Notes under the pieces: generated by a model
Seen by the model: the letters and a program-made list of their open reading frames with translations, nothing else
Told to the model about the DNA's origin: nothing
Databases searched by the model: none
Shown: piece by piece, positions 20,653 to 58,640 of the stretch
Numbering within the stretch: position 1 is the first letter of the stretch
Layout: each line of letters begins with the position of its first letter
Made by a program: the position numbers and the translations under genes
Source: Iphione sp. A-MEVVRFRX5
Taxonomy: Eukaryota
Reading direction: 5' to 3'
NCBI GenBank assembly: GCA_976226885.1
Contig: OZ320313.1
Coordinates: 52,204,001 to 52,268,000 of the forward strand
Length of the DNA: 64,000 nt

Positions 20653-23529
20653 TAACTGTGGTACTGGGTTGGGGGGGGGGGGGTGTTCGTCCTACTTTCC
20701 TGGTTCTCTCCACTGACATATATTTTTGGTGTGTGTCTTGACAGCTCAGTACGGCGTGAGTGAAGTTTCAGCCAGTGTGATGCAGTGCTACATATACATG
20801 TACATGTGCATTATTTCTGAAAATCCTCTTGCAGTTTGATTATGCTCAAAAACATTGTAGTTAACATATCACTGGGTCTAGCATACGACTTGGAAGAACT
20901 ATGAAGCAATATATGCTTCACTGAACAGAATTGTGTCACCGTGTTTACCACCAGCTCATTTCAGCAGATTTGCATCACAAAACTTTAAATTTCACATTTT
21001 CCCATATATATTTTCACATTTTCCCATATATAATATAAGACTCTCACAGCCTATGGCCGGGTTTCCATGTGTAGGATTTTGTAAAATGTATCGCAGATAC
21101 ATGTGTACAGGAAATTATTATATTCTGACAATGAACTATACCTTGTCCATGTGTGCAGAATTGGAGTCCAGAATCCATTGTCTGGAAACAATGTCCTTAC
21201 ATTTCCCCTGTACAACAGACTCTAGACATAATACATGTAGTAGCATAGCAAATGAGTCTTTCGTACAGGGAAAGATGTGATAAGATGTATGAAAACAAGG
21301 TTGATTTGCATATCATTTCAATAAAAAACCGTCAGCACAAATTTGGCAGGAATTTCTAAAGATCTGCGCAAAAAAAACATACAGTTTAACCAGATTTCGC
21401 AGGAATTCCTTTGAGATCAGATACACACACAGACACAGACACACACATGCATATCTATATGGTACATAGACAAAAGGAAAGAAAGAGATGAAGAGAGAGG
21501 AAAGGACAGAGAATGCACCATTTACATGTACGTGGAATACAGCCATCCATGAGGGTCAGGAGACAGATGTTTAAACCACAATAATTCCCACATTGACACC
21601 ATACACGTCTTACAAAATCATACCCATGGAAATCAGACCTAATATCCATGCCAACTGATACTAAAGGCCTTTGTCAGATTTACCAGCATCTTACCCGTCG
21701 TTTTGCTGTCTTAAAATCGTGATAATCACCTCTAACTTGGGGACTGCACCCACTCTTGTTCATATGCATACGGGAGGCTACTTACCGTTACCACTACTGA
21801 TGTACAACGCTGGCCCTTCGTTGGGACGCTGGCCAGACCTCCTCGCATCGTGCACACTCATTACGAACCTGTTCCTCGCCATAAAGCTTGGCCCGATAGC
21901 AGGTGCTAAAAAAAGGGCTGTGTCAGGTTGTCCAGACATAGTGTTGGCGATGGCCTCTGTCGCTCGTGGCCCGACCTTCCCATCCCTCCTGCCGTCTACT
22001 CGCCTCAACAGCAGGGCTGATTGAAGAGGCCAATCTATCAGCACCCTGCGCTCATAATGATAAATAATGACGAGCGGGGGCTAGATTGGGGTGAGGGTTA
22101 TCGCACCTTTAGCGGCGGACGGCGCTGCTGGCGAGAGGGTCCAGGTTAGACTAGAACAATGTGCAGCCATTCAGGGTCAACTTGTAAAAGATAATCGAGT
22201 GGGCGAGGTTGCCGAAGGGGGAAGGCGAACCAGGCAGGAAATGGGGGCTGTCTAATAGAAGCCTTGAGGACAGGAAGTTAGGTGCAATAAATAGGTACAT
22301 ATATTGCAATAACCAGGAGCCATCTCCAGCAATGACGGCGGGTTGTGTGTGAGGCGAGATGACCGATCTTATTACCGTTATAAATTGCGGAAAACTGAAT
22401 ACTGAAAACGTGCTTACATAGTGTATCAGTCCTCTTTGTACATATTCAAGACAATGATCGACTTCTGCTCTTTGAATTATTTTACCACTTCACTTATTCT
22501 GACTTGGCTGTTTTATCGACCAGTTGTACCGTTTACATAGAACCAGCCCCTATCTGCAAGAGAAAATTCAAGCTGCGTAAGGTCCGTCAATACCACCCAC
22601 CACAACCACCCGCCTCATACACTACTGCAGGCCCTTCTCATTCATGGGGTGCTGGCAGGCCCTATTGGCGTATCAATCCGTCTCCTCAACCCAAGCCGTT
22701 GCCCCACCAACAGGCCTTCCAATCTCCAGGCTCATCACCTGCAAAACTGACCCCCATCATAATCCGACCCCCGCCACCGGCCACACGCTAACGCCCCGAC
22801 CCCTCACCCAGCCGGCGCCGATAGATGTGCCTGGTCACACCTATTCCCAGGCTGGGCGCCGCCCCTGCCGTGAGGTCTAGGCGCTGGCCTGACGCTGTCA
22901 GGCCGGGCGTCGGCGCCAATGACTCAGGGAGCTGCGAGCGCCGCCTAAGGTGTGGCCGCCTGCACCCTGATCAGGCCAGATACCCTCATTACCAGCCAGT
23001 GCTATCTCTGAGGTGGAGGGTTCAATGTGTGAAGCAGCGAGGGTGCAAGTCGGAGAAGGCCATGTGTTGGCAGAGGGCTATTCATCGGAGAGCTGGGGGT
23101 CCCACTACCGTCATGGGCATTGACCCCCTATCGATCTGCCAGAGGCTCCTTAAATAGTAGAAGAAATGACTGGGTTCACCTAACCCTCAGTTCTATGGAA
23201 CGTGTATTCAAATACTGATGACAGACGGCTATATGACCTCCTTTACTATCCTATCCTTTGAAACAAATTAAAGAGCACAATGCTACAGAAGCAACAACAA
23301 ATCCCATGCTACATCAGCCTGACCCTAAATTCTGCCATGCAGCGGCGAGTAGTCTGATCAATCGGTATGGATATATAACTGTGACATTCAGAACTTAAAT
23401 ACCATTAGCACCGCGCCAAAGACGTCAAAATTCCCAGGAATTAAAGGCAATTTAAAACGCATTGGTTGCCGATATCTCCCTCCATTATCGCGTGGGCAAA
23501 AGCGTAAACAAGATATGAAAAAACACTGC

Positions 23530-23610
23530 ACTTACCATAATGCTGGTTTGAAGCGTAATTGCAAGAAAACCGCTTAACTCACCTGCAAAAAAAAACACAT
23601 GAAAATGCTT
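23530..23610 (-). other. Candidate recursive splice site (AG|GTGAGT) with a 47-nt RS-exon
   Basis: Minus strand reads CATTTTCATGTGTTTTTTTTTGCAG|GTGAGT (junction between 23583 and 23582), then 47 nt, then ATG|GTAAGT (donor at 23535-23530). Confidence 0.55.
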
Positions 23611-25747
23611 TATTGACCACAGGTTTCCATACAACAAATAAACATAATGGAGAACCGTCAGAAAGTTAACGCGAATAAAAACCAACACACGCGGCCACTG
23701 AACTGATTAAGAACATCGGAATATGGCTGACGAAATGGTATAATGGACAAAAAGGTAACCTATGAGTGACGGACTGGTATTGATTTTTCTCGTAAATAAT
23801 CAGAAAAGCAGCATCTAACTAATTTAGATATTGATCAGGCTACATCATGCTTGACTGGCGAGGACGCTGCGGTTTCCTCCTGGCGCGCCGACGTGCCGCT
23901 CCATTGGTGATGGATGACGTCAGCATAAGTGATGCGTGACGTCATGTTCAGTATGTATACCTCGTAGCATGGTCCGTCACGCATCACGATCTTCCCGGAG
24001 AGAAACACTCGTGCCTTCCACTGCTTACCAGGGAAGGGATAGTCTAGAGGGCAAATGTGAGCAACAGCATGTGAAATATGGCTCCTGGGGGGGAGGGGTG
24101 CTGCTAGTCTGAGGACGCATAGGGCCACTTTAAAACAAAATGTCTAGGGAGCAAATCACCTCAGCCCCCCATACGGCGCAATCCGTCATAATTAGTCCTA
24201 GGGTTTAACAAGTCAACAATGAATTCGAAAGGTCCCTGCCTAGCGCACAGACATCGTTCCGTTATCAGTTCGAGAAGACCAAAAAACATCACAAATGAAA
24301 CGACCTAGCCCTGCACAAATTAGCCACATTGAAATGACATCAACGGCAAAACAATTCATGGCTTAATTAACGATCACTTTTAGCGAAAAGGAAAACAGTT
24401 AATGAGGTTTCTTTTACTGTTTGGTGGCCTTGAATTATCCTCCTGACGAGGGTTAACGTACTGCTACGCTTCTGTAAGACTAGAATGGATGTATTGATGA
24501 CTTGCAGCATTTGTATTCGACAAAAGTAACTCGAAAGAGATTTGGATACTAGAATGATATAATAGTGACGAGGAAATGACCTCCAGTCATGACGTTTCCC
24601 CTTGCTGGAGTTGGAAAAAGAGATCCAAAGATTTTTCAATTAAACAATTACGTTTTTCTGATGGTTCACATTTAATATCTGCACTTAATTAAGCAGAAAA
24701 AGGTAATGGGGGAGCCGTAAAGACGAGGAGAACAGAAAAGACAAATGTCCATTTTCGTTTCGTTAGACGTGAACAGGTTCAGTTTTTGAGAAAGATTATT
24801 TTAAAGTTTGTAGTGGGCAGCGGCGCATGCTAAAGCTGCTGTGTGCCCGTCGCTGAGGGCGCGCGGGTTTCAGATGGTTGATCGCTGACAGAATGACTGA
24901 GAAGCAGCTGGCTGGTGACATTCAAGTCGACTAGATGGTCTGCTCCTTCTCCTCCAGGTGTCATGCTGGCTCCCCCAGCCCCGATGGCACCGTCAGCAAT
25001 GCTTCTTCAAATCTCTGACTAGCGAGCCCCGCGTGCCCACTCACGCGGCTAGGTAAACAAGGCATTTGCACCTTCCCGGCTAAAAGCAACCATTTCCTGT
25101 CAGACGGTTTATGGGGAAGCGTCCGGTAATGACAAACTGGGCACAGGCCGGCCGCTTTATATTCAGACCACGCCGTGCTGGTGCCTGCCTCTCCCTCCCT
25201 CCAAACCACCTTCATCCCACCTTCCCTTTTCACTTCACTCGCACCTCCACTTTTAGTTTCCTTCTGAGTTTAAATATATTTGACTTTCAACATTAAACGC
25301 CGACTATTCAACAAGCTACACCCGGTTTATTAAGTTATGATCCAGCAAAAAATTGTACGTTGAGTCAAGTTCGACACGGTGGGTAAATATATTTAAAAGA
25401 GAGAGAACAATAGCAACACTTATCCTTTAGTTTTCTAAGCCACGTACATAATGGTGTACTTATACACAAACTCACTCTATAGATTAGTGATGGTTGCAGG
25501 TTTTTTTTACACTAGCAACGCGAAGGGACTAGGCATGCATCGACGTACATATTAGCGTTTATGTTTGACAAAAGGACATAGCAGAAAAGAGGGCTTTACA
25601 GTGGGTCGGATTGCACGCGGGCCTTCTACTTTTAAAGTGCTTATAACGCACATTTCGCTGGAGAGCGTCTCCCCTCCTTCCTCAGCAACCCCGACGTCTC
25701 ATTTACATGGAAATGAGCCTCCAACAGAACGCCAATTAAAGGTGTGA

Positions 25748-31760: not shown

Positions 31761-32308
31761 TAAAGGAAACTAATTTTAGAGCGTCCACAATGAAATGAGT
31801 ACGATCCTGGTAAACGATAGAAAATATCAAGACACTGAAATGTACTGACATCCTTATCGTTATTGTAAGTACTGCAGGAAACGCTAATCTCCTGACATTC
31901 TTCTGAACTTACTCTTAAAAATCAGACCACGACGATTTTTTAATCTCTTGAAACATCAGACCAAAAGACAAAACATCTTAGCAACTTTGTCTCGGTACAT
32001 GTGTGTAAAAATGGAGGTCTGACTACGCCTCAGCACAAAAAGAAATCTAAATCCTGTCAAATATATGTACTGTTAAGCAATATTTTCATTAATACATGTA
32101 CAGGAAAAACTCGCTTTGAGACCATCTCACTTTCCGACCAAATCCACTATTACGACCATTTTGGGTCGGAACGGAATTATTTTTAGTACATTTCTATAAT
32201 GGTAGAATCTTACTTTGCGACCATATCACTTTCCGACCAAATTCGCCATACGACCATTCATCTTTGGGTCGTTTTCAATATAATTTATTATCACTTTGTG
32301 ACCATCCC

Positions 32309-32965
32309 CGACGACTTTGATGGTCTCTCACCTTGGAGGGGTAGCCCGAGAGTGGTCGCGGGATGTCAAGGCGACGTCTCTGATGTTCCTCACACCGTGG
32401 AGGGGTTGGCCGGCAGTGGTCGCGGGATGTCGAGGCGTAAATTTCGACGACTTTGATGGTCTCTCACCCTGGAGGGGTGAGGCCGAGAGTGGTCGCGGGA
32501 TGTCGAGGCGTCAACTTTGACGACTTTGATGGTCTCTCACCCTGGAGGGGTGAGGCCGAGAGTGGTCGCGGGCGTCAACGGCGACGTCTCTGATGGTCTT
32601 CGCACCTTGGAGGGGTAGCCCGAGAGTGGTCGCGGGATGTCAAGGCGACGTCTCTGATGTTCCTCACACCGTGGAGGGGTTGGCCGGCAGTGGTCGCGGG
32701 ATGTCGAGGCGACGTCTCTGATGTTCCTCACACCGTGGAGGGGTTGGCCGGCAGTGGTCGCGGGATGTCGAGGCGTCAATTTCGACGACTTTGATGGTCT
32801 CTCACACCGTGGAGGGGTTGGCTGGAGTGGTCGAGAGCGTCAACGGGGACGTCTTTGATGGTCTCACACGTTGGAGGGGTGAGGCCGGCAGTGGTCGAGA
32901 GCGTCAACGGGGACGTCTTTGATGGTCTCTCACCTTGGAGAGGGTCGGCCGGCAGTGGTCGAGGG
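32309..32965. repeat. GC/CpG-rich minisatellite inside the Tigger element, 10 units of 62-74 bp
   Basis: TGGAG(G/A)GG anchors at about 32334, 32398, 32470, 32543, 32608, 32672, 32736, 32810, 32872 and 32936. Each unit contains GTGGTCG plus GATGGTCT or GATGTTCC. Confidence 0.95.
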
Positions 32966-33093
32966 TGGGCGACCTGGCCCCCTACCTCTACCATACATAA
33001 GGAGGTCCAGACAGCCCCACAAATCACTCTTCTCCTGGATTCCAGTGAGGACACACATCTCCAGTTCCAGCTCCTGATCCAGCTCCAGCCAAG

Positions 33094-34635
33094 ATGCCAA
33101 GAAATGAACTCTCCCTTGGTGACAAGGTCAAGCTCATCAAGGTCTCCACTGGAAGAAGCCAGAGAAGCCTTGCTGAAGAATTCAAAGTGGGCAAGACTCA
33201 AGTCCAGGGTATCCTCAAGAGAAAGAGGGAGATCATGGAGCAGTATGAGAAAACACCAGACCCCTCAGTCAAGAGGCACCACTACTCCACTGACCTCTCT
33301 GACCTGGATGAAGCCTGCTACAAGTGGTTCTGCAGGATGAGGTCAATGAACATCCCCATCTCAGGGCCTGCCATCCAGAAGAAGGCCCTGACCCTGAGCA
33401 AGGAGCTCAACCTGCCAGAGTTCAAGGCCTCAGTGGGGTGGCTCCAACGCTTCAAGACCAGACACTCAATTGGGGCCTTGAAGGTGTGTGGAGAGAGTGG
33501 AGCAGTGCAGGACTCCACTGTTGAGGACTGGCTGCAACATCTGCCTGAGAAGCTGGAAGGCTACAGCCCTGCCAACATCTACAACATGGATGAGACAGGG
33601 CTGTTCTACAGGATCATGCCTGATAAGACCCTTGCCACCAAGGGATCTTCAGCCACTGGTGTCAAGAAGTCCAAGGAGAGAATTACAGTGTCCCTCTGTG
33701 TAAACATGGAGGGAGACTTTGAAAAGACACTAGTGATTGGCAAGGCAGCCAAACCAAGATGCTTCAAGCACATAGACATATCATCCCTCCCAGTGACTTG
33801 GAAATCCAACACCAAGGCTTGGATGACAGCATCAGTGTTTGAAGAGTGGCTGCACACCTTCAACAATAAGATGAAGAGGCAAGGGAGGCATGTGCTGCTA
33901 CTTCTGGATAATGCCCCATCACACCCACATGGTCTCAAGTTGAGCCATGTGAAGATGGTCTTCCTTCCTCCACAGGCCACTTCAGTACTGCAGCCACTGG
34001 ATCAAGGAATTATCCAGAACATCAAGATGCACTACAAGACTAAGTTGTTGGAGTACTTCCTCAACAAGGCTGAGAGCATTCAGGGAGATGGTCCTATTGA
34101 CATCCAGTCCCTGATGAAGTCAGTGGATCTCCACAGAGCTATCCACTGGCTGAGAGACTCCATCAACCAGGTGAAGCCAGAGACAGTCCGCAAGTGCTTC
34201 ATCAAGGCTGGCCTGAAGGTCCCAGACCAGCCCTGCCAAATGGAGGAAGAGGAGGATGAAGATGATCTTCCTCTTGCAGAGCTGGTGAGGAGGACACAAA
34301 CACTGCTCCCTGTGGCTGACCCATGTCTGCCTGATGAGTATTGTGGGCTGGATGATGCTCTTCCAGCTCACAACCAGGATGTTGATGATGCTGATCTTCT
34401 GCCAAGGAAAGATGAGGAGGAAGAAGAGGAGGAGGAAGAAGATACACCAGTGTCTACTTCACTCTCCCATGCCAAGGCCATGGAAATGATGGAACAATTG
34501 AGGGATCACTTCCTCCACCATGGGGCAAACACCAGTCTGGAGGACTTGATGGCCACCATGAATTCCTTTGGGAAACACATCCAACAGGCAAAGAAGATTC
34601 AACCAACTATTGACTCTTTTTTCAAGCCAAAATAG
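33094..34635 (+). CDS. pogo/Tigger transposase (CENP-B-type HTH domains plus DDE_1 domain, DD30D), 513 aa
   Basis: N-terminal LSLGDKVKLIK..SQRSLAEEFKVGKTQVQGILK and WF...PISGPAIQKKA...FKASVGWLQRFKTRH (CENP-B/Tc5 HTH). Catalytic motifs NMDETGLF, LLLLDNAPSH and LQPLDQGII, with 30 residues between D2 and D3 by manual count. Acidic tail and C-terminal QPTIDSFF. No stops or frameshifts. Confidence 0.97.
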   Translation: MPRNELSLGDKVKLIKVSTGRSQRSLAEEFKVGKTQVQGILKRKREIMEQYEKTPDPSVKRHHYSTDLSDLDEACYKWFCRMRSMNIPISGPAIQKKALTLSKELNLPEFKASVGWLQRFKTRHSIGALKVCGESGAVQDSTVEDWLQHLPEKLEGYSPANIYNMDETGLFYRIMPDKTLATKGSSATGVKKSKERITVSLCVNMEGDFEKTLVIGKAAKPRCFKHIDISSLPVTWKSNTKAWMTASVFEEWLHTFNNKMKRQGRHVLLLLDNAPSHPHGLKLSHVKMVFLPPQATSVLQPLDQGIIQNIKMHYKTKLLEYFLNKAESIQGDGPIDIQSLMKSVDLHRAIHWLRDSINQVKPETVRKCFIKAGLKVPDQPCQMEEEEDEDDLPLAELVRRTQTLLPVADPCLPDEYCGLDDALPAHNQDVDDADLLPRKDEEEEEEEEEDTPVSTSLSHAKAMEMMEQLRDHFLHHGANTSLEDLMATMNSFGKHIQQAKKIQPTIDSFFKPK

Positions 34636-38675: not shown

Positions 38676-39248
38676 CAGCAAGCATTTCCAGAGATCTTGT
38701 TAAAGAGGTATGGAATTCATGAAAATATGTGAAAGAAAGGGGTCGGGGTCGCCCCCACATTAATTGAAGATAGGATGTGTGTATGAGCTCTCCCCTACAT
38801 TAATTAAAGAAAATATTTAACCTCTAACAATGATTCATCTTTAATCTTGCAATGAATAAAAGAATGAATTTTTACCCTACATGGATAAAATGTTGCCGTA
38901 AAGTAGATCAGCCTATTTGGGAGGAAACCTCAGACATGTGATTTGAGAAAGGTCAATGGTTTATTACATTTGGTTAGATCTTTAGTAAGAATATTGAAAT
39001 ATGAGACAATTGTCATGTACGTTGTCTTGAAAATGAGTACTTTAAGTAAAAACAAGGAAAACATTCGACTATTTTTTCAGTTAGGTACAGTGGAACCTTA
39101 GGGTACAGTCAGCTCAGAAACTCAAATAACAAGGGATTAGCGGCAGTTGGAGGCTTGTCAGACAATTCTTCAATGATTGTGTTCAGTTGGCAAAACCTGA
39201 TTCTAAATAGTTATTAAATGTTATAGACACCATGAAAAGCATTGATAT

Positions 39249-39872
39249 AACAAGAGTGTGGACCTGTGAGGTCTATTGTCCCCTGCCATGAACTGCCCAG
39301 AGAGAGAGGGCAGAGGGGGGGGGGGAGAGAGAGAGAGAGAGAGAATGAGTATGTGTATGTGTGTGTGTGGTGTCTCTCTCTTTACAACCACCTTGATTGG
39401 TACCTAATTTCAGGGTGGTTGGCTGGGCTTAAGTCCTTCAGGTTTACAACTCTTGGTTTTGCCTCACTGAGCACCAGACTGCTACAAACCCTCGGTTCTT
39501 CATGACTGAGCACAGCTCTCTTGGTTCTGCCTCAATGAGCACCAGACTGCTGGTAGAAGGGAGATATTGTTAAGTGTGTATGTGTACATGTATGTGCATT
39601 GTCAGACCTAGGAACCCCTAAACCAAGTATGTATGTTTGTAGGTGTGTTAGCAAATGAGTAAAATTGGTATAATTTCACTCTTAAAATACTTGAATTATG
39701 ACCAAAATTACACAGTGCCATGGGGCAATGTACACAAATATTATATCTTAAAATCAGGTCTTTTGAGTCAATGGTTTAAGACTTATAAGACCCACAAGAG
39801 TGTGACGGATGGTCGGGACAACAGCTCATAGCATTCCTAATGTCCCCCCCTCTATGAGGCGGGGGACAACAA
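39249..39872 (+). mobile_element. DINE-1/HINE-like non-autonomous Helentron element, copy 1
   Basis: 5' end AACAAGAGTGTGGACC, internal microsatellite and short tandem core repeats, 3' hairpin TGTCCCCCCC-TCTATGAGGC-GGGGGACA followed by ACAA. Colinear with 56942-57544. Confidence 0.75.
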
Positions 39873-40119
39873 GGGATTAGTGCCAGTGTGGGCTTAACTG
39901 ACAGTTTTTCAATGGCCACACACCTGGCACACACTCAGAAATAAGGTCGACAGGCTACTGTGGCCACTTTAGATCAGTAGGTGACCGAGGCCTCACTGTA
40001 CTGGGATATGATAAGGAGGAATTCCATAGTGGTGATGTCATTACAGGGACAACCCTTCTTATCAGTGGTTTGTGTGCAGTCAAGCAGAACTAAAGAAACT
40101 AACCTACTACCGCTTACTG

Positions 40120-57544: not shown

Positions 57545-58640
57545 GATCCAGACAGATGGTTGATGTAGATGTTGATGTTGATGTAGAAGACTACCTACAC
57601 GTTCAGAGTTGAATAAACAATGGTGTGTCAAGTCATGCACACGTTTGGAAATCACTCAGCTATATTTCAATACAGGAACCTAGTTTTTTATTTCAAGGAC
57701 TTAGATGTTTTTATCTTTATACATTTGTGATATATATATATATATATTTATGATATATGTATTCGGAAATGAGGGCAGTGAAGCTTCAGGAGAAGGACAG
57801 GCGGGCTGATTCTATTCAGGCAAAATGTGTACAGAGTGGTTGACTCTGATTGGTTGAGTAATAAATCAATAATCAAGCAGAAAGCACAGGTAAAGGAGGA
57901 AGTGAGAGAAGAAGTGTACCTGTGGACCAGACATACTCATACAAAGTGCAACTAAGAATCCAGACATGTAGGTCCAAGGTATAGCAGATAGGGACGTGGC
58001 AAAGGGATATCAAAGAGACGTGGATGCTATTACAGAGGTGGAAGTACCATGTACAGACAAGCAGTTAAAACGGCGAAGATATGATAACGGTATGGAATAA
58101 ACGTATAGATATGAGAAGGTATAGTATCGGGTATAAAAATTAATGAAGGATACTGAAAGATACAAACACTGTAAAATATTGTTGATCCCCCTGAATTTTC
58201 TTAAACGTTTACGTATTGCTCTAAACATCTCTTGTATTTTGTTTGATACAATGGTTACCTACAAGTTTTCACCTCCAAGGTTCATGCAAACACTAACCAA
58301 ACTGAACTTCTGAGACGTTCCACGGCCCGGTTTCCATACCTGCGTTGCTGTCAATGTGCGTGACTGTCCATGACCATGCCTTTTTATTGAACATGTTGAT
58401 ATCAATGAGGGCTGTCTTTTGACTGCGAGTTCAGGAGCTTGCTGGAGCCATCCCATTTTCATATTCATTTTCGGTACTTGCTCAATAATTTCCACAAACA
58501 TGCACACTAACACACAGTAGTATACTGCAGACTATCTTTGAATCAGGTGAAAATAAGTTTTCAGCTGAATAGACACTGTCTTTTATATGATAGATGGTAT
58601 GAAATTTTATCTCATGTGCATATAATTTGCATAAATAACT

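What the first reader, a model, noticed from the sequence alone, without database searches (positions are those of the whole stretch)
23530..23610. Textbook-like recursive splice site with a poison RS-exon
Seen on the minus strand: a polypyrimidine tract (T9) and GCAG immediately followed by a consensus donor GTGAGT, i.e. a zero-length exon at 23583/23582. A second consensus donor TG|GTAAGT lies 47 nt later. The 47-nt interval is not a multiple of 3 and begins GTG AGT TAA. Established: ratchet points in long Drosophila introns and RS-sites in long vertebrate neuronal genes have this AG|GT architecture. In vertebrates they are defined through an RS-exon with a downstream competing 5' splice site, usually carrying a premature stop. 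Inference: recursive splicing of a giant intron in this invertebrate; I am not aware of it being documented outside flies and vertebrates for such a lineage. An alternative is a 5'-UTR exon of a transcript from the CRE/CCAAT cluster at about 23900-23945.
Basis: partly seen in the sequence, partly recalled or inferred. Interest (0 to 1): 0.8.

Follow-up and report, generated by a model that had tools for sequence, protein, structure and literature searches.

The report
Candidate recursive splice site, untested
On the minus strand an intron-end signal is fused to an intron-start signal, with a second intron-start signal 47 bases later; this is the layout used to remove giant introns in steps, but no RNA data, host gene or related genome could be obtained to show that it is used.

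Summary
On the minus strand a T9 tract and GCAG end at 23583. GTGAGT starts at 23582. ATG|GTAAGT follows, with its GT at 23535. The 47-nt interval has stops in two frames.

The site is the clear outlier of the window: the best of 7,615 GT sites, an acceptor in the top 0.06%, and a fused score of 13.4 bits against 7.8 for the runner-up. About 0.003 such sites are expected per window. The second donor adds roughly a 0.4% coincidence. A chance origin is therefore unlikely.

Whether the site is recursive could not be tested. No RNA run was listed, no host exon was found in 64 kb, and no orthologous DNA was reachable.

A strong rival remains. Two perfect CREs and a CCAAT box lie 320-360 nt upstream, in the most CpG-rich 500-bp bin of the neighbourhood. 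The two donors could therefore close a first exon, with the pyrimidine tract incidental (a 1-5% coincidence).

My odds:
- RS-exon module in a long minus-strand intron: about 0.42
- Promoter-proximal first exon: about 0.25
- Ordinary included short exon: about 0.18
- Chance: about 0.12

The novelty claim is overstated. Ratchet-site enrichment in long introns was already reported for sea urchin, bee and beetle (PMC2773006). This scan holds 21 earlier notes on candidate recursive splice sites, and those shown came from other parts of this genome.

The parts
23587..23595 (-). T9 polypyrimidine tract of the candidate 3' splice site
   Evidence: Read. Tract score is in the top 0.9% of 14-mers (T-favouring) or top 5% (C=T). 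Only 2 runs of T>=9 occur on the minus strand of the window.
23599..23603 (-). Possible branch point UUCAU (A at 23600, 17 nt before the AG). There is no AG between it and the acceptor.
   Evidence: My reading against the yUnAy consensus. This is inference only.
23583..23586 (-). GCAG acceptor; the intron would end at 23583
   Evidence: Acceptor score 9.4 bits, top 0.06% of 7,971 AG sites.
23577..23582 (-). GTGAGT: recursive (regenerated) 5' splice site, or alternatively an ordinary first-exon donor CAG|GTGAGT
   Evidence: Best donor of 7,615 GT sites on both strands, 8.5 bits.
23536..23582 (-). 47-nt candidate RS-exon. Not a multiple of 3, stops in two frames, ends in ATG.
   Evidence: sequence, length and three-frame translation.
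23530..23535 (-). GTAAGT: downstream competing 5' splice site (ATG|GTAAGT)
   Evidence: Score 6.5 bits, top 0.09% of GT sites.
23609..23614 (-). AATAAA, 26-31 nt upstream of the acceptor AG. The only A[AT]TAAA on the minus strand between 23900 and 21900.
23903..23944 (.). Promoter-like cluster: two palindromic CREs (23937-23944, 23915-23922) and CCAAT (23907-23903, minus). GGCGCGCC and an ETS-like core lie just downstream, at 23889-23873.
   Evidence: 5 CREs in the window against 0.68 expected, two of them 22 bp apart. (motif inventory). CpG o/e is 1.21 in 23501-24000.
23372..23465 (-). Second, weaker motif cluster downstream of the module: CCAAT 23465-23461, TGACGTCT 23427-23420, GGCGCG 23417, TATATA 23377-23372
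   Evidence: Motif matches only.
24029..24084 (-). Possible upstream 56-nt exon: C-rich acceptor (AG 24086-24085) and donor CTG|GTAAGC (GT 24028-24027)
   Evidence: The donor is in the top 0.4% of GT sites. Its use is unproven.

Best explanation
The stretch 23530-23603 on the minus strand is a genuine exon-definition module of the recursive-splicing type. It has a branch point and T9 tract, and an acceptor whose AG abuts a consensus donor (GCAG|GTGAGT). A second donor (ATG|GTAAGT) lies 47 nt downstream.

Inferred mechanism:
1. The window lies in a long minus-strand intron.
2. The spliceosome first defines the 47-nt unit by pairing the acceptor with the downstream donor.
3. It then joins the upstream exon to 23582. 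This rebuilds a 5' splice site from the exon's last bases plus GTGAGT.
4. That rebuilt site is used to remove the rest of the intron, so the 47 nt normally disappear.
5. If the downstream donor wins instead, a frame-shifting, stop-carrying 47-nt exon is included.

What is shown: the sequence architecture and its statistical exceptionality. What is inferred: transcription of the minus strand, the existence of a host gene, use of either junction, and the outcome of the donor competition.
For: - Architecture is exact.
- The fused-site score is the outlier of the window: 13.4 against 7.8 bits, 0 of 200 simulations, 0.0028 expected per window.
- The two best-placed donors of the whole window lie 47 nt apart on the same strand.
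- RS-exon length and properties match the fly description in PMC8605326: about 50 nt, generally out of frame, flanked by a downstream donor. They also match PMC6224609, where most fly RS sites have a 5'ss less than 100 nt downstream.
- The only protein-family matches in the window are two transposons, both on the plus strand. No phase-0 coding exon was found in the 23.5 kb downstream.
- A exceeds T on the plus strand in 27 of 32 2-kb bins, on both sides of the site. From memory, this is the direction expected for introns transcribed from the minus strand.
- Ratchet sites are enriched on the sense strand of long introns in another invertebrate deuterostome, the sea urchin (PMC2773006).
Against: - No RNA evidence of any kind: none was listed.
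- No host gene was identified, so 'inside a long intron on the sense strand' is unproven.
- Conservation was not tested.
- There is no second RS-like site on either strand of the 64 kb. The next best scores are at chance level.
- GTRAGT and AATAAA strand counts do not support minus-strand transcription once composition is controlled.
- A CRE/CCAAT cluster in a CpG-rich patch lies 320-360 nt upstream, with no other donor in between. This is what a first-exon donor would look like.
- Given a real consensus donor, the acceptor half rests only on a tract that 1-5% of positions match.
- In deuterostomes, exons beginning with a 5'ss-like sequence are mostly included rather than removed (PMC6224609).
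Confidence: 0.42

Rival explanations
1. Promoter-proximal first exon. The CRE/CCAAT cluster at 23903-23944 drives a minus-strand transcript that starts around 23860-23800. CAG|GTGAGT (23582) and ATG|GTAAGT (23535) are alternative donors closing a first exon of about 270-320 nt. The T9 tract in front of the first donor is incidental and no acceptor is used.
For: - Two perfect CREs 22 bp apart (5 in the window against 0.68 expected), with CCAAT, GGCGCGCC and extra CRE half-sites.
- CpG o/e of 1.21, the highest 500-bp bin between 14.5 and 42 kb.
- No donor scoring 4 bits or more lies between the cluster and 23582, and the window's best donor sits just where a first-exon donor is expected.
- The plus strand has no comparable donor nearby.
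- A G-rich sense-strand block lies downstream at 22600-22900.
- The pyrimidine tract is only a 1-5% coincidence once a donor is given.
Against: - The putative 274-nt first exon has 7 ATGs against 5.4 expected, so there is no uATG depletion. It also has an AATAAA 26 nt before the donor.
- No coding exon was found in the 23.5 kb downstream.
- The second strong donor is about a 0.4% coincidence by chance.
- A>T skew on the plus strand continues upstream of the cluster, with no step at 23900.
- The orientation and activity of the motif cluster are unknown.
Confidence: 0.25
2. Ordinary included short exon that happens to begin with GTGAGT (an 'annotated RS-exon' in the sense of Blazquez et al.). 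It would be a 47-nt 5'-UTR, alternative or poison exon, spliced in from an upstream exon. That upstream exon could be the candidate 56-nt unit at 24084-24029. The 47-nt exon might supply the start codon through its terminal ATG (A at -3). Recursion would be at most a minor by-path.
For: - Acceptor and downstream donor are both strong.
- A further exon-like unit with donor CTG|GTAAGC lies 446 nt upstream on the same strand.
- The exon ends in ATG with A at -3.
- Frame 2 is open throughout.
- Such exons are common and mostly included in deuterostomes (PMC6224609).
Against: - On the weight matrix used, ATG|GT is expected at about 4% of donors, so the ATG carries little weight.
- No continuation of a reading frame was found downstream.
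- The 67-aa ORF over the site has no homologue.
- If the upstream exon ends in AG, the regenerated donor would be at least as strong as the exon's own donor. In flies this predicts skipping (PMC8605326).
- Both flanking introns would have to be very long, or the neighbouring exons undetectable.
Confidence: 0.18
3. Chance juxtaposition of splice-like motifs in untranscribed or non-spliced DNA, with no function.
For: - The window was picked by eye from a very large scan.
- About 0.003 fused sites of this strength are expected per window. That is tens per genome if the genome is about 500 Mb, a size I give from memory.
- No independent evidence of transcription exists.
Against: - Adding the second donor at 47 nt (about 0.4%) brings the joint expectation to about 1e-5 per window. 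That is well under one per genome.
- Three of the 18 minus-strand donors scoring 5 bits or more in the window fall within 500 nt here.
Confidence: 0.12
4. Spliced-leader trans-splice acceptor in front of a short 5' UTR ending in ATG.
For: A U-rich tract plus AG lies 47 nt before an ATG.
Against: - From memory, SL trans-splicing is known in tunicates but not in cephalochordates.
- Earlier scan notes place this genome in a lancelet; I did not check this.
- The ATG is followed at once by a consensus donor and not by an ORF.
- No SL RNA or any other Rfam family was found in the window.
Confidence: 0.03

Closest known systems
Drosophila intronic ratchet points with cryptic RS-exons (Ubx, kuz, Bx; Hatton 1998, Burnette 2005, Duff 2015, Joseph 2018/2021; PMC8605326)
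   Same: Fused (Y)nNCAG|GTRAGT. Short cryptic exon of about 50 nt closed by a second donor. Exon out of frame. Gene-poor long-intron-like surroundings.
   Different: Fly sites are proven by saw-tooth RNA-seq, intermediates, lariats and mutagenesis, and their SA|SD core is ultraconserved. None of this could be tested here. Only one site was found in 64 kb. The host gene is unknown. A promoter-like cluster lies 320-360 nt upstream.
Vertebrate RS-sites with RS-exons in long neuronal genes (Sibley et al. 2015, as summarised in PMC5126111 and PMC6224609)
   Same: RS-exon definition, competition between the regenerated and the downstream 5'ss, and premature stops in the RS-exon. From my memory of that paper's abstract, RS-exons are included when preceded by cryptic promoters or exons. 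That would give the adjacent CRE cluster a role.
   Different: The vertebrate cases lie in introns of more than 100 kb in identified genes and have RNA support. Here the gene and the RNA are both missing.
Annotated (expressed) RS-exons of deuterostomes, kept in by the exon junction complex (Blazquez et al. 2018, PMC6224609)
   Same: An exon whose first bases regenerate a 5' splice site. The class is reported from sea urchin to human.
   Different: Those are annotated, mostly constitutive and mostly coding exons. This one is 47 nt with stops in two frames and no known transcript.
Computationally predicted RP-sites in long introns of non-fly invertebrates (Shepard et al. 2009, PMC2773006)
   Same: The same motif definition. 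Enrichment on the sense strand of introns over 50 kb in sea urchin (0.54 against 0.066 per 100 kb), beetle, bee and mosquito.
   Different: That work is statistical and did not include cephalochordates. It gives a prior, not evidence for this site.

Membership tests
Recursive splice site (ratchet point) with cryptic RS-exon | Juxtaposed 3' and 5' splice sites, (Y)nNCAG|GTRAGT | tested here: met
   T9-GCAG|GTGAGT at 23595-23577 on the minus strand. It is the unique match in the window against 0.01 expected. It scores 13.4 bits against 7.8 for the runner-up, with 0.0028 expected per window.
Recursive splice site (ratchet point) with cryptic RS-exon | Downstream 5' splice site within about 100 nt that defines a short RS-exon (about 50 nt) | tested here: met
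   ATG|GTAAGT lies 47 nt downstream, in the top 0.09% of GT sites. Criterion taken from PMC8605326 and PMC6224609.
Recursive splice site (ratchet point) with cryptic RS-exon | RS-exon out of frame and/or carrying a premature stop | tested here: met
   The exon is 47 nt, with a stop at codon 3 of frame 0 and codon 1 of frame 1. Frame 2 is open but shifts the frame. The host reading frame is unknown.
Recursive splice site (ratchet point) with cryptic RS-exon | Regenerated 5'ss at least as strong as the RS-exon 5'ss (predicts skipping) | tested here: inconclusive
   The intron-side scores are about equal (GTGAGT 5.0 bits; GTAAGT about 5.1 on the same matrix). With exon sides included the scores are 8.5 against 6.5 bits. 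The real exon side would come from an unknown upstream exon.
Recursive splice site (ratchet point) with cryptic RS-exon | Lies inside a long intron, on the sense strand of the host gene | tested here: inconclusive
   No host exon was found in 64 kb. T>A on the minus strand in 27 of 32 bins and antisense transposons fit. GTRAGT and AATAAA strand counts do not help. The host gene was not identified.
Recursive splice site (ratchet point) with cryptic RS-exon | Evolutionary conservation of the SA|SD core and of the downstream donor | not testable with these tools
   No collection with related animal genomes could be reached from non-coding DNA. The ORF over the site has no homologue on record, and the transposase ORF is not on record.
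Recursive splice site (ratchet point) with cryptic RS-exon | RNA evidence: saw-tooth coverage, exon-to-RS-site junction reads, lariats | not testable with these tools
   The look-up of sequencing runs listed no RNA run.
Promoter-proximal first exon with alternative donors | Core or proximal promoter elements upstream, at a suitable distance and orientation | tested here: inconclusive
   Two CREs, CCAAT and GC-rich elements lie 320-360 nt upstream of the first donor, and CpG o/e is 1.21. These are motif matches only. Orientation is not determined and there is no clear TATA or Inr.
Promoter-proximal first exon with alternative donors | 5' UTR-like first exon (uATG depletion) followed by coding exons | tested here: not met
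   There are 7 ATGs in 274 nt against 5.4 expected. No downstream coding exon was found in 23.5 kb. A non-coding transcript is not excluded.
Spliced-leader trans-splice acceptor | SL RNA genes and SL-bearing mRNAs in the lineage | not tested
   No Rfam family was found in the window. That the lineage lacks SL trans-splicing is from memory only.

The most novel reading that the evidence does not exclude
The module and the adjacent CRE cluster form one device in a cephalochordate giant intron. Transcripts coming from the distant upstream exon rebuild a strong donor at 23582 and splice the 47 nt out recursively. Transcripts started by the cAMP/activity-responsive internal promoter, 270-360 nt upstream, cannot rebuild that donor. 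They either use 23582 as a plain donor or include the 47-nt stop-carrying exon. The RS-exon would thus act as a promoter-dependent binary switch or quality filter, the logic proposed for vertebrate RS-exons, here at the base of the chordates.
Probability: 0.1. Interest if true: 0.6.

Novelty: new member of a known kind. Interest (0 to 1): 0.3.

Why it matters
If it is used, this would be one more sign that stepwise removal of long introns through RS-exons predates the split between flies and chordates and operates in cephalochordates. So far only sequence predictions exist for that group. One unverified site adds little by itself.

The real value lies in the series of similar candidates this scan has noted in the same genome. 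A single stranded total-RNA data set could test them all at once. The pairing with a CRE-rich promoter-like element would also make this site a convenient test of the 'cryptic promoter decides RS-exon inclusion' model.

Tried and rejected
- **RNA evidence.** The look-up of sequencing runs on 21500-25500 (kind rna) listed nothing.
- **Orthologous DNA through spurious ORFs.** The 67-aa ORF spanning the site found no candidate at all. I therefore did not spend further searches on the 97-aa ORF.
- **Annotated context through a transposon protein.** The 513-aa transposase is not on record in the look-up of encoding contigs. The reverse-transcriptase ORF is 5'-truncated with no early ATG, so I did not try it.
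- **Host exons.**
  - A codon-usage ranking of 590 stop-to-stop ORFs gave only transposons.
  - Pfam scans of 20 ORFs also gave only transposons.
  - A search for a phase-0 exon following the terminal ATG found nothing convincing.
  - A bZIP motif scan, testing a CREM/ICER-like internal-promoter idea, found nothing.
- **Ladder of further RS sites.** None was found on either strand.
- **U1-site and poly(A)-signal strand asymmetry.** The raw GTRAGT count of 32 against 15 looked promising. It comes from depletion on the plus strand (15 against 24.7 expected). AATAAA is not depleted on the minus strand. I rejected it as evidence.
- **Repeat origin.** The 23300-24100 stretch is not repeated in the window, and the findings index has no look-alike (a blank there means nothing).
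- **Known RNA families.** None in the window.
- **Terminal ATG as start codon.** I judged it uninformative. On the weight matrix used, ATG|GT is expected at about 4% of donors.

Full report
**1. The observation.**
The minus strand reads exactly as described. A run of nine T (23595-23587) is followed by GCAG ending at 23583. GTGAGT begins at 23582. After 47 nt (23582-23536) comes ATG|GTAAGT, with GT at 23535-23534. The 47 nt start GTG AGT TAA. Frames 0 and 1 stop at once and frame 2 is open. TGACGTCA lies at 23915-23922 and 23937-23944, and CCAAT at 23907-23903.

**2. Is it more than chance?**
- The strict pattern YYYYYYNCAGGTRAGT occurs once, with 0.01 expected.
- The core CAGGTRAGT alone occurs at its chance rate, 1 against 1.1.
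- I scored all 479 AGGT sites of both strands with a simple weight matrix.
  - This site scores 13.4 bits and the next best 7.8.
  - None of 200 first-order Markov simulations of the window reached it.
  - An exact convolution gives 0.0028 expected sites per window.
- Scored separately, the donor at 23582 is the best of 7,615 GT sites. The donor at 23535 is in the top 0.09%, and the acceptor in the top 0.06% of 7,971 AG sites.
- A donor as good as the second one falling 20-100 nt downstream is about a 0.4% coincidence.
- The joint expectation is about 1e-5 per window, which is less than one per genome of this size class. Pure chance is therefore unlikely (my estimate: 0.12).
- One reservation matters. 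A consensus donor already contains CAG. If the GT is simply a real donor, the only extra 'acceptor' evidence is the pyrimidine tract, which 1-5% of positions match.

**3. Surroundings.**
- The window has no detectable host exon. Among 590 stop-to-stop ORFs, only two have coding character and Pfam domains:
  - a pogo/Tc5 transposase (33094-34632, +);
  - a 5'-truncated non-LTR reverse transcriptase with RNase H (52118-54763, +).
- Both transposons are antisense to a hypothetical minus-strand gene.
- A exceeds T on the plus strand in 27 of 32 2-kb bins, on both sides of the site. This is the direction expected if the minus strand is the sense strand of a long intron. I hold that rule from memory, for mammals, so I give it little weight.
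- CpG o/e is mosaic. Much of the window is undepleted and the two transposon ORFs are strongly depleted.
- GTRAGT and AATAAA strand counts do not help once composition is controlled.
- There is no second RS-like site on either strand.
- The stretch 23300-24100 is single-copy in the window.
- No Rfam family matches.

**4. The promoter-like element.**
- Five full CREs occur in the window against 0.68 expected, and two of them are 22 bp apart at 23915-23944.
- Beside them are CCAAT, GGCGCGCC and an ETS-like core. Five further CRE half-sites are spread from 23979 to 23427.
- The 500-bp bin holding them has CpG o/e of 1.21.
- Between this cluster and 23582 there is no minus-strand donor scoring 4 bits or more. 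The plus strand has none of note.
- The window's best donor therefore lies about 270 nt after a plausible start site, which is what a first exon looks like.
- Evidence against that reading:
  - the 274 nt hold 7 ATGs against 5.4 expected;
  - they also hold an AATAAA at 23614-23609;
  - no coding exon follows in 23.5 kb;
  - the A>T skew shows no step at 23900.
- A second, weaker motif group lies downstream of the module: CCAAT 23465, TGACGTCT 23427 and TATATA 23377.
- A possible 56-nt exon (24084-24029, donor CTG|GTAAGC) lies upstream.
- Three of the 18 minus-strand donors scoring 5 bits or more fall within 500 nt here.

**5. What could not be done.**
- No RNA run was listed for 21500-25500, and the single search was then spent. 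No reads could be laid on the site.
- Orthologous DNA could not be reached. The ORF over the site has no homologue and the transposase is not on record.

**6. Weighing the readings.**

| Evidence | Favours | Rough factor |
|---|---|---|
| Second donor at 47 nt | true RS-type module | tens |
| Pyrimidine tract | true RS-type module | tens |
| Gene-free surroundings | true RS-type module | several-fold |
| CRE cluster | first exon | perhaps 5-50 |
| First-exon donors outnumber ratchet sites in any genome | first exon | about 100 |

These are rough personal estimates. With mid-range values the module reading comes out ahead, but the range spans both outcomes.

Within the module reading, the literature cuts two ways. 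In flies such short out-of-frame units are cryptic and removed (PMC8605326). In deuterostomes, exons that begin with a 5'ss-like sequence are mostly kept in by the exon junction complex (PMC6224609).

My odds:
- recursive RS-exon module in a long intron: 0.42
- first exon with two donors: 0.25
- ordinary included short exon: 0.18
- chance: 0.12
- trans-splice acceptor: 0.03

**7. Comparison with what is known, and novelty.**
- The layout is that of fly ratchet points and vertebrate RS-sites. Four sequence-level criteria were tested. Three are met and one (relative donor strength) is inconclusive. Location is also inconclusive. Conservation and RNA could not be tested.
- I found no paper on recursive splicing in amphioxus.
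They reported sense-strand RP-site enrichment in introns over 50 kb of sea urchin (8.2-fold), beetle, bee and mosquito (PMC2773006).
- It also overlooks Blazquez et al. 2018, who counted RS-type annotated exons from sea urchin to human.
- Earlier notes of this scan say the genome is a lancelet and list 21 recursive-splice candidates, none with RNA data. They are unchecked, and I did not verify the species. I use them only as leads.
- At best this site is a new member of a known kind.

**8. Verdict.**
Interest is modest (0.3). One more untested candidate adds little, and a simple promoter-plus-first-exon reading is not excluded. A single stranded total-RNA data set, or the public gene annotation of this locus, would settle it.

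Noticed in passing
window 24029-24084 (-): Exon-like 56-nt unit. A C-rich acceptor (AG 24086-24085) is followed by donor CTG|GTAAGC (top 0.4% of GT sites), 446 nt upstream of the RS-like acceptor on the same strand. Read with the 31-aa ORF from ATG 24120, splicing to 23582 would give TGG TGA, a stop at once.
   Followed up: partly
window 23372-23465 (-): Second motif group downstream of the module (CCAAT, TGACGTCT, GGCGCG, TATATA). Five extra CRE half-sites are spread over 23427-23979. The 47-nt unit therefore sits inside a CRE-rich stretch of about 550 nt.
   Followed up: partly
window 22600-22900: GC-rich block (60-68% GC) with strong strand skew: GC skew down to -0.45 on the plus strand, so G-rich on the minus strand. 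It lies 700-1000 nt downstream of the CRE cluster and contains another TTTTGCAG|GTGA junction (near 22740) with a weak donor.
   Followed up: no
window 33001-34500: The pogo/Tc5 transposase ORF (DDE_1, HTH_Tnp_Tc5, CENP-B_N) has CpG o/e of 0.00-0.03, while the 1 kb in front of it (32001-33000) is at 1.0-1.1.
   Followed up: partly
window 51893-54763 (+): 5'-truncated non-LTR retrotransposon ORF (RVT_1 plus RNase_H). It is 957 codons open with no ATG in the first 181, and CpG o/e is about 0.27.
   Followed up: partly
window 38942-39873 and 56942-57545: Two copies of one repeat, 79-94% identical in pieces, 17.7 kb apart in the same orientation (families D5, D8, D9, D11, D14). Both lie in CpG-depleted DNA.
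   Followed up: no
window 1501-2200: GC-rich patch (64% GC, CpG o/e 0.92) with another perfect CRE at 2162-2169. It could be another regulatory element or an exon of a neighbouring gene.
   Followed up: no
whole window: GTRAGT is under-represented on the plus strand (15 against 24.7 expected under a second-order Markov model) but not on the minus strand (32 against 29.3). Unexplained.
   Followed up: partly
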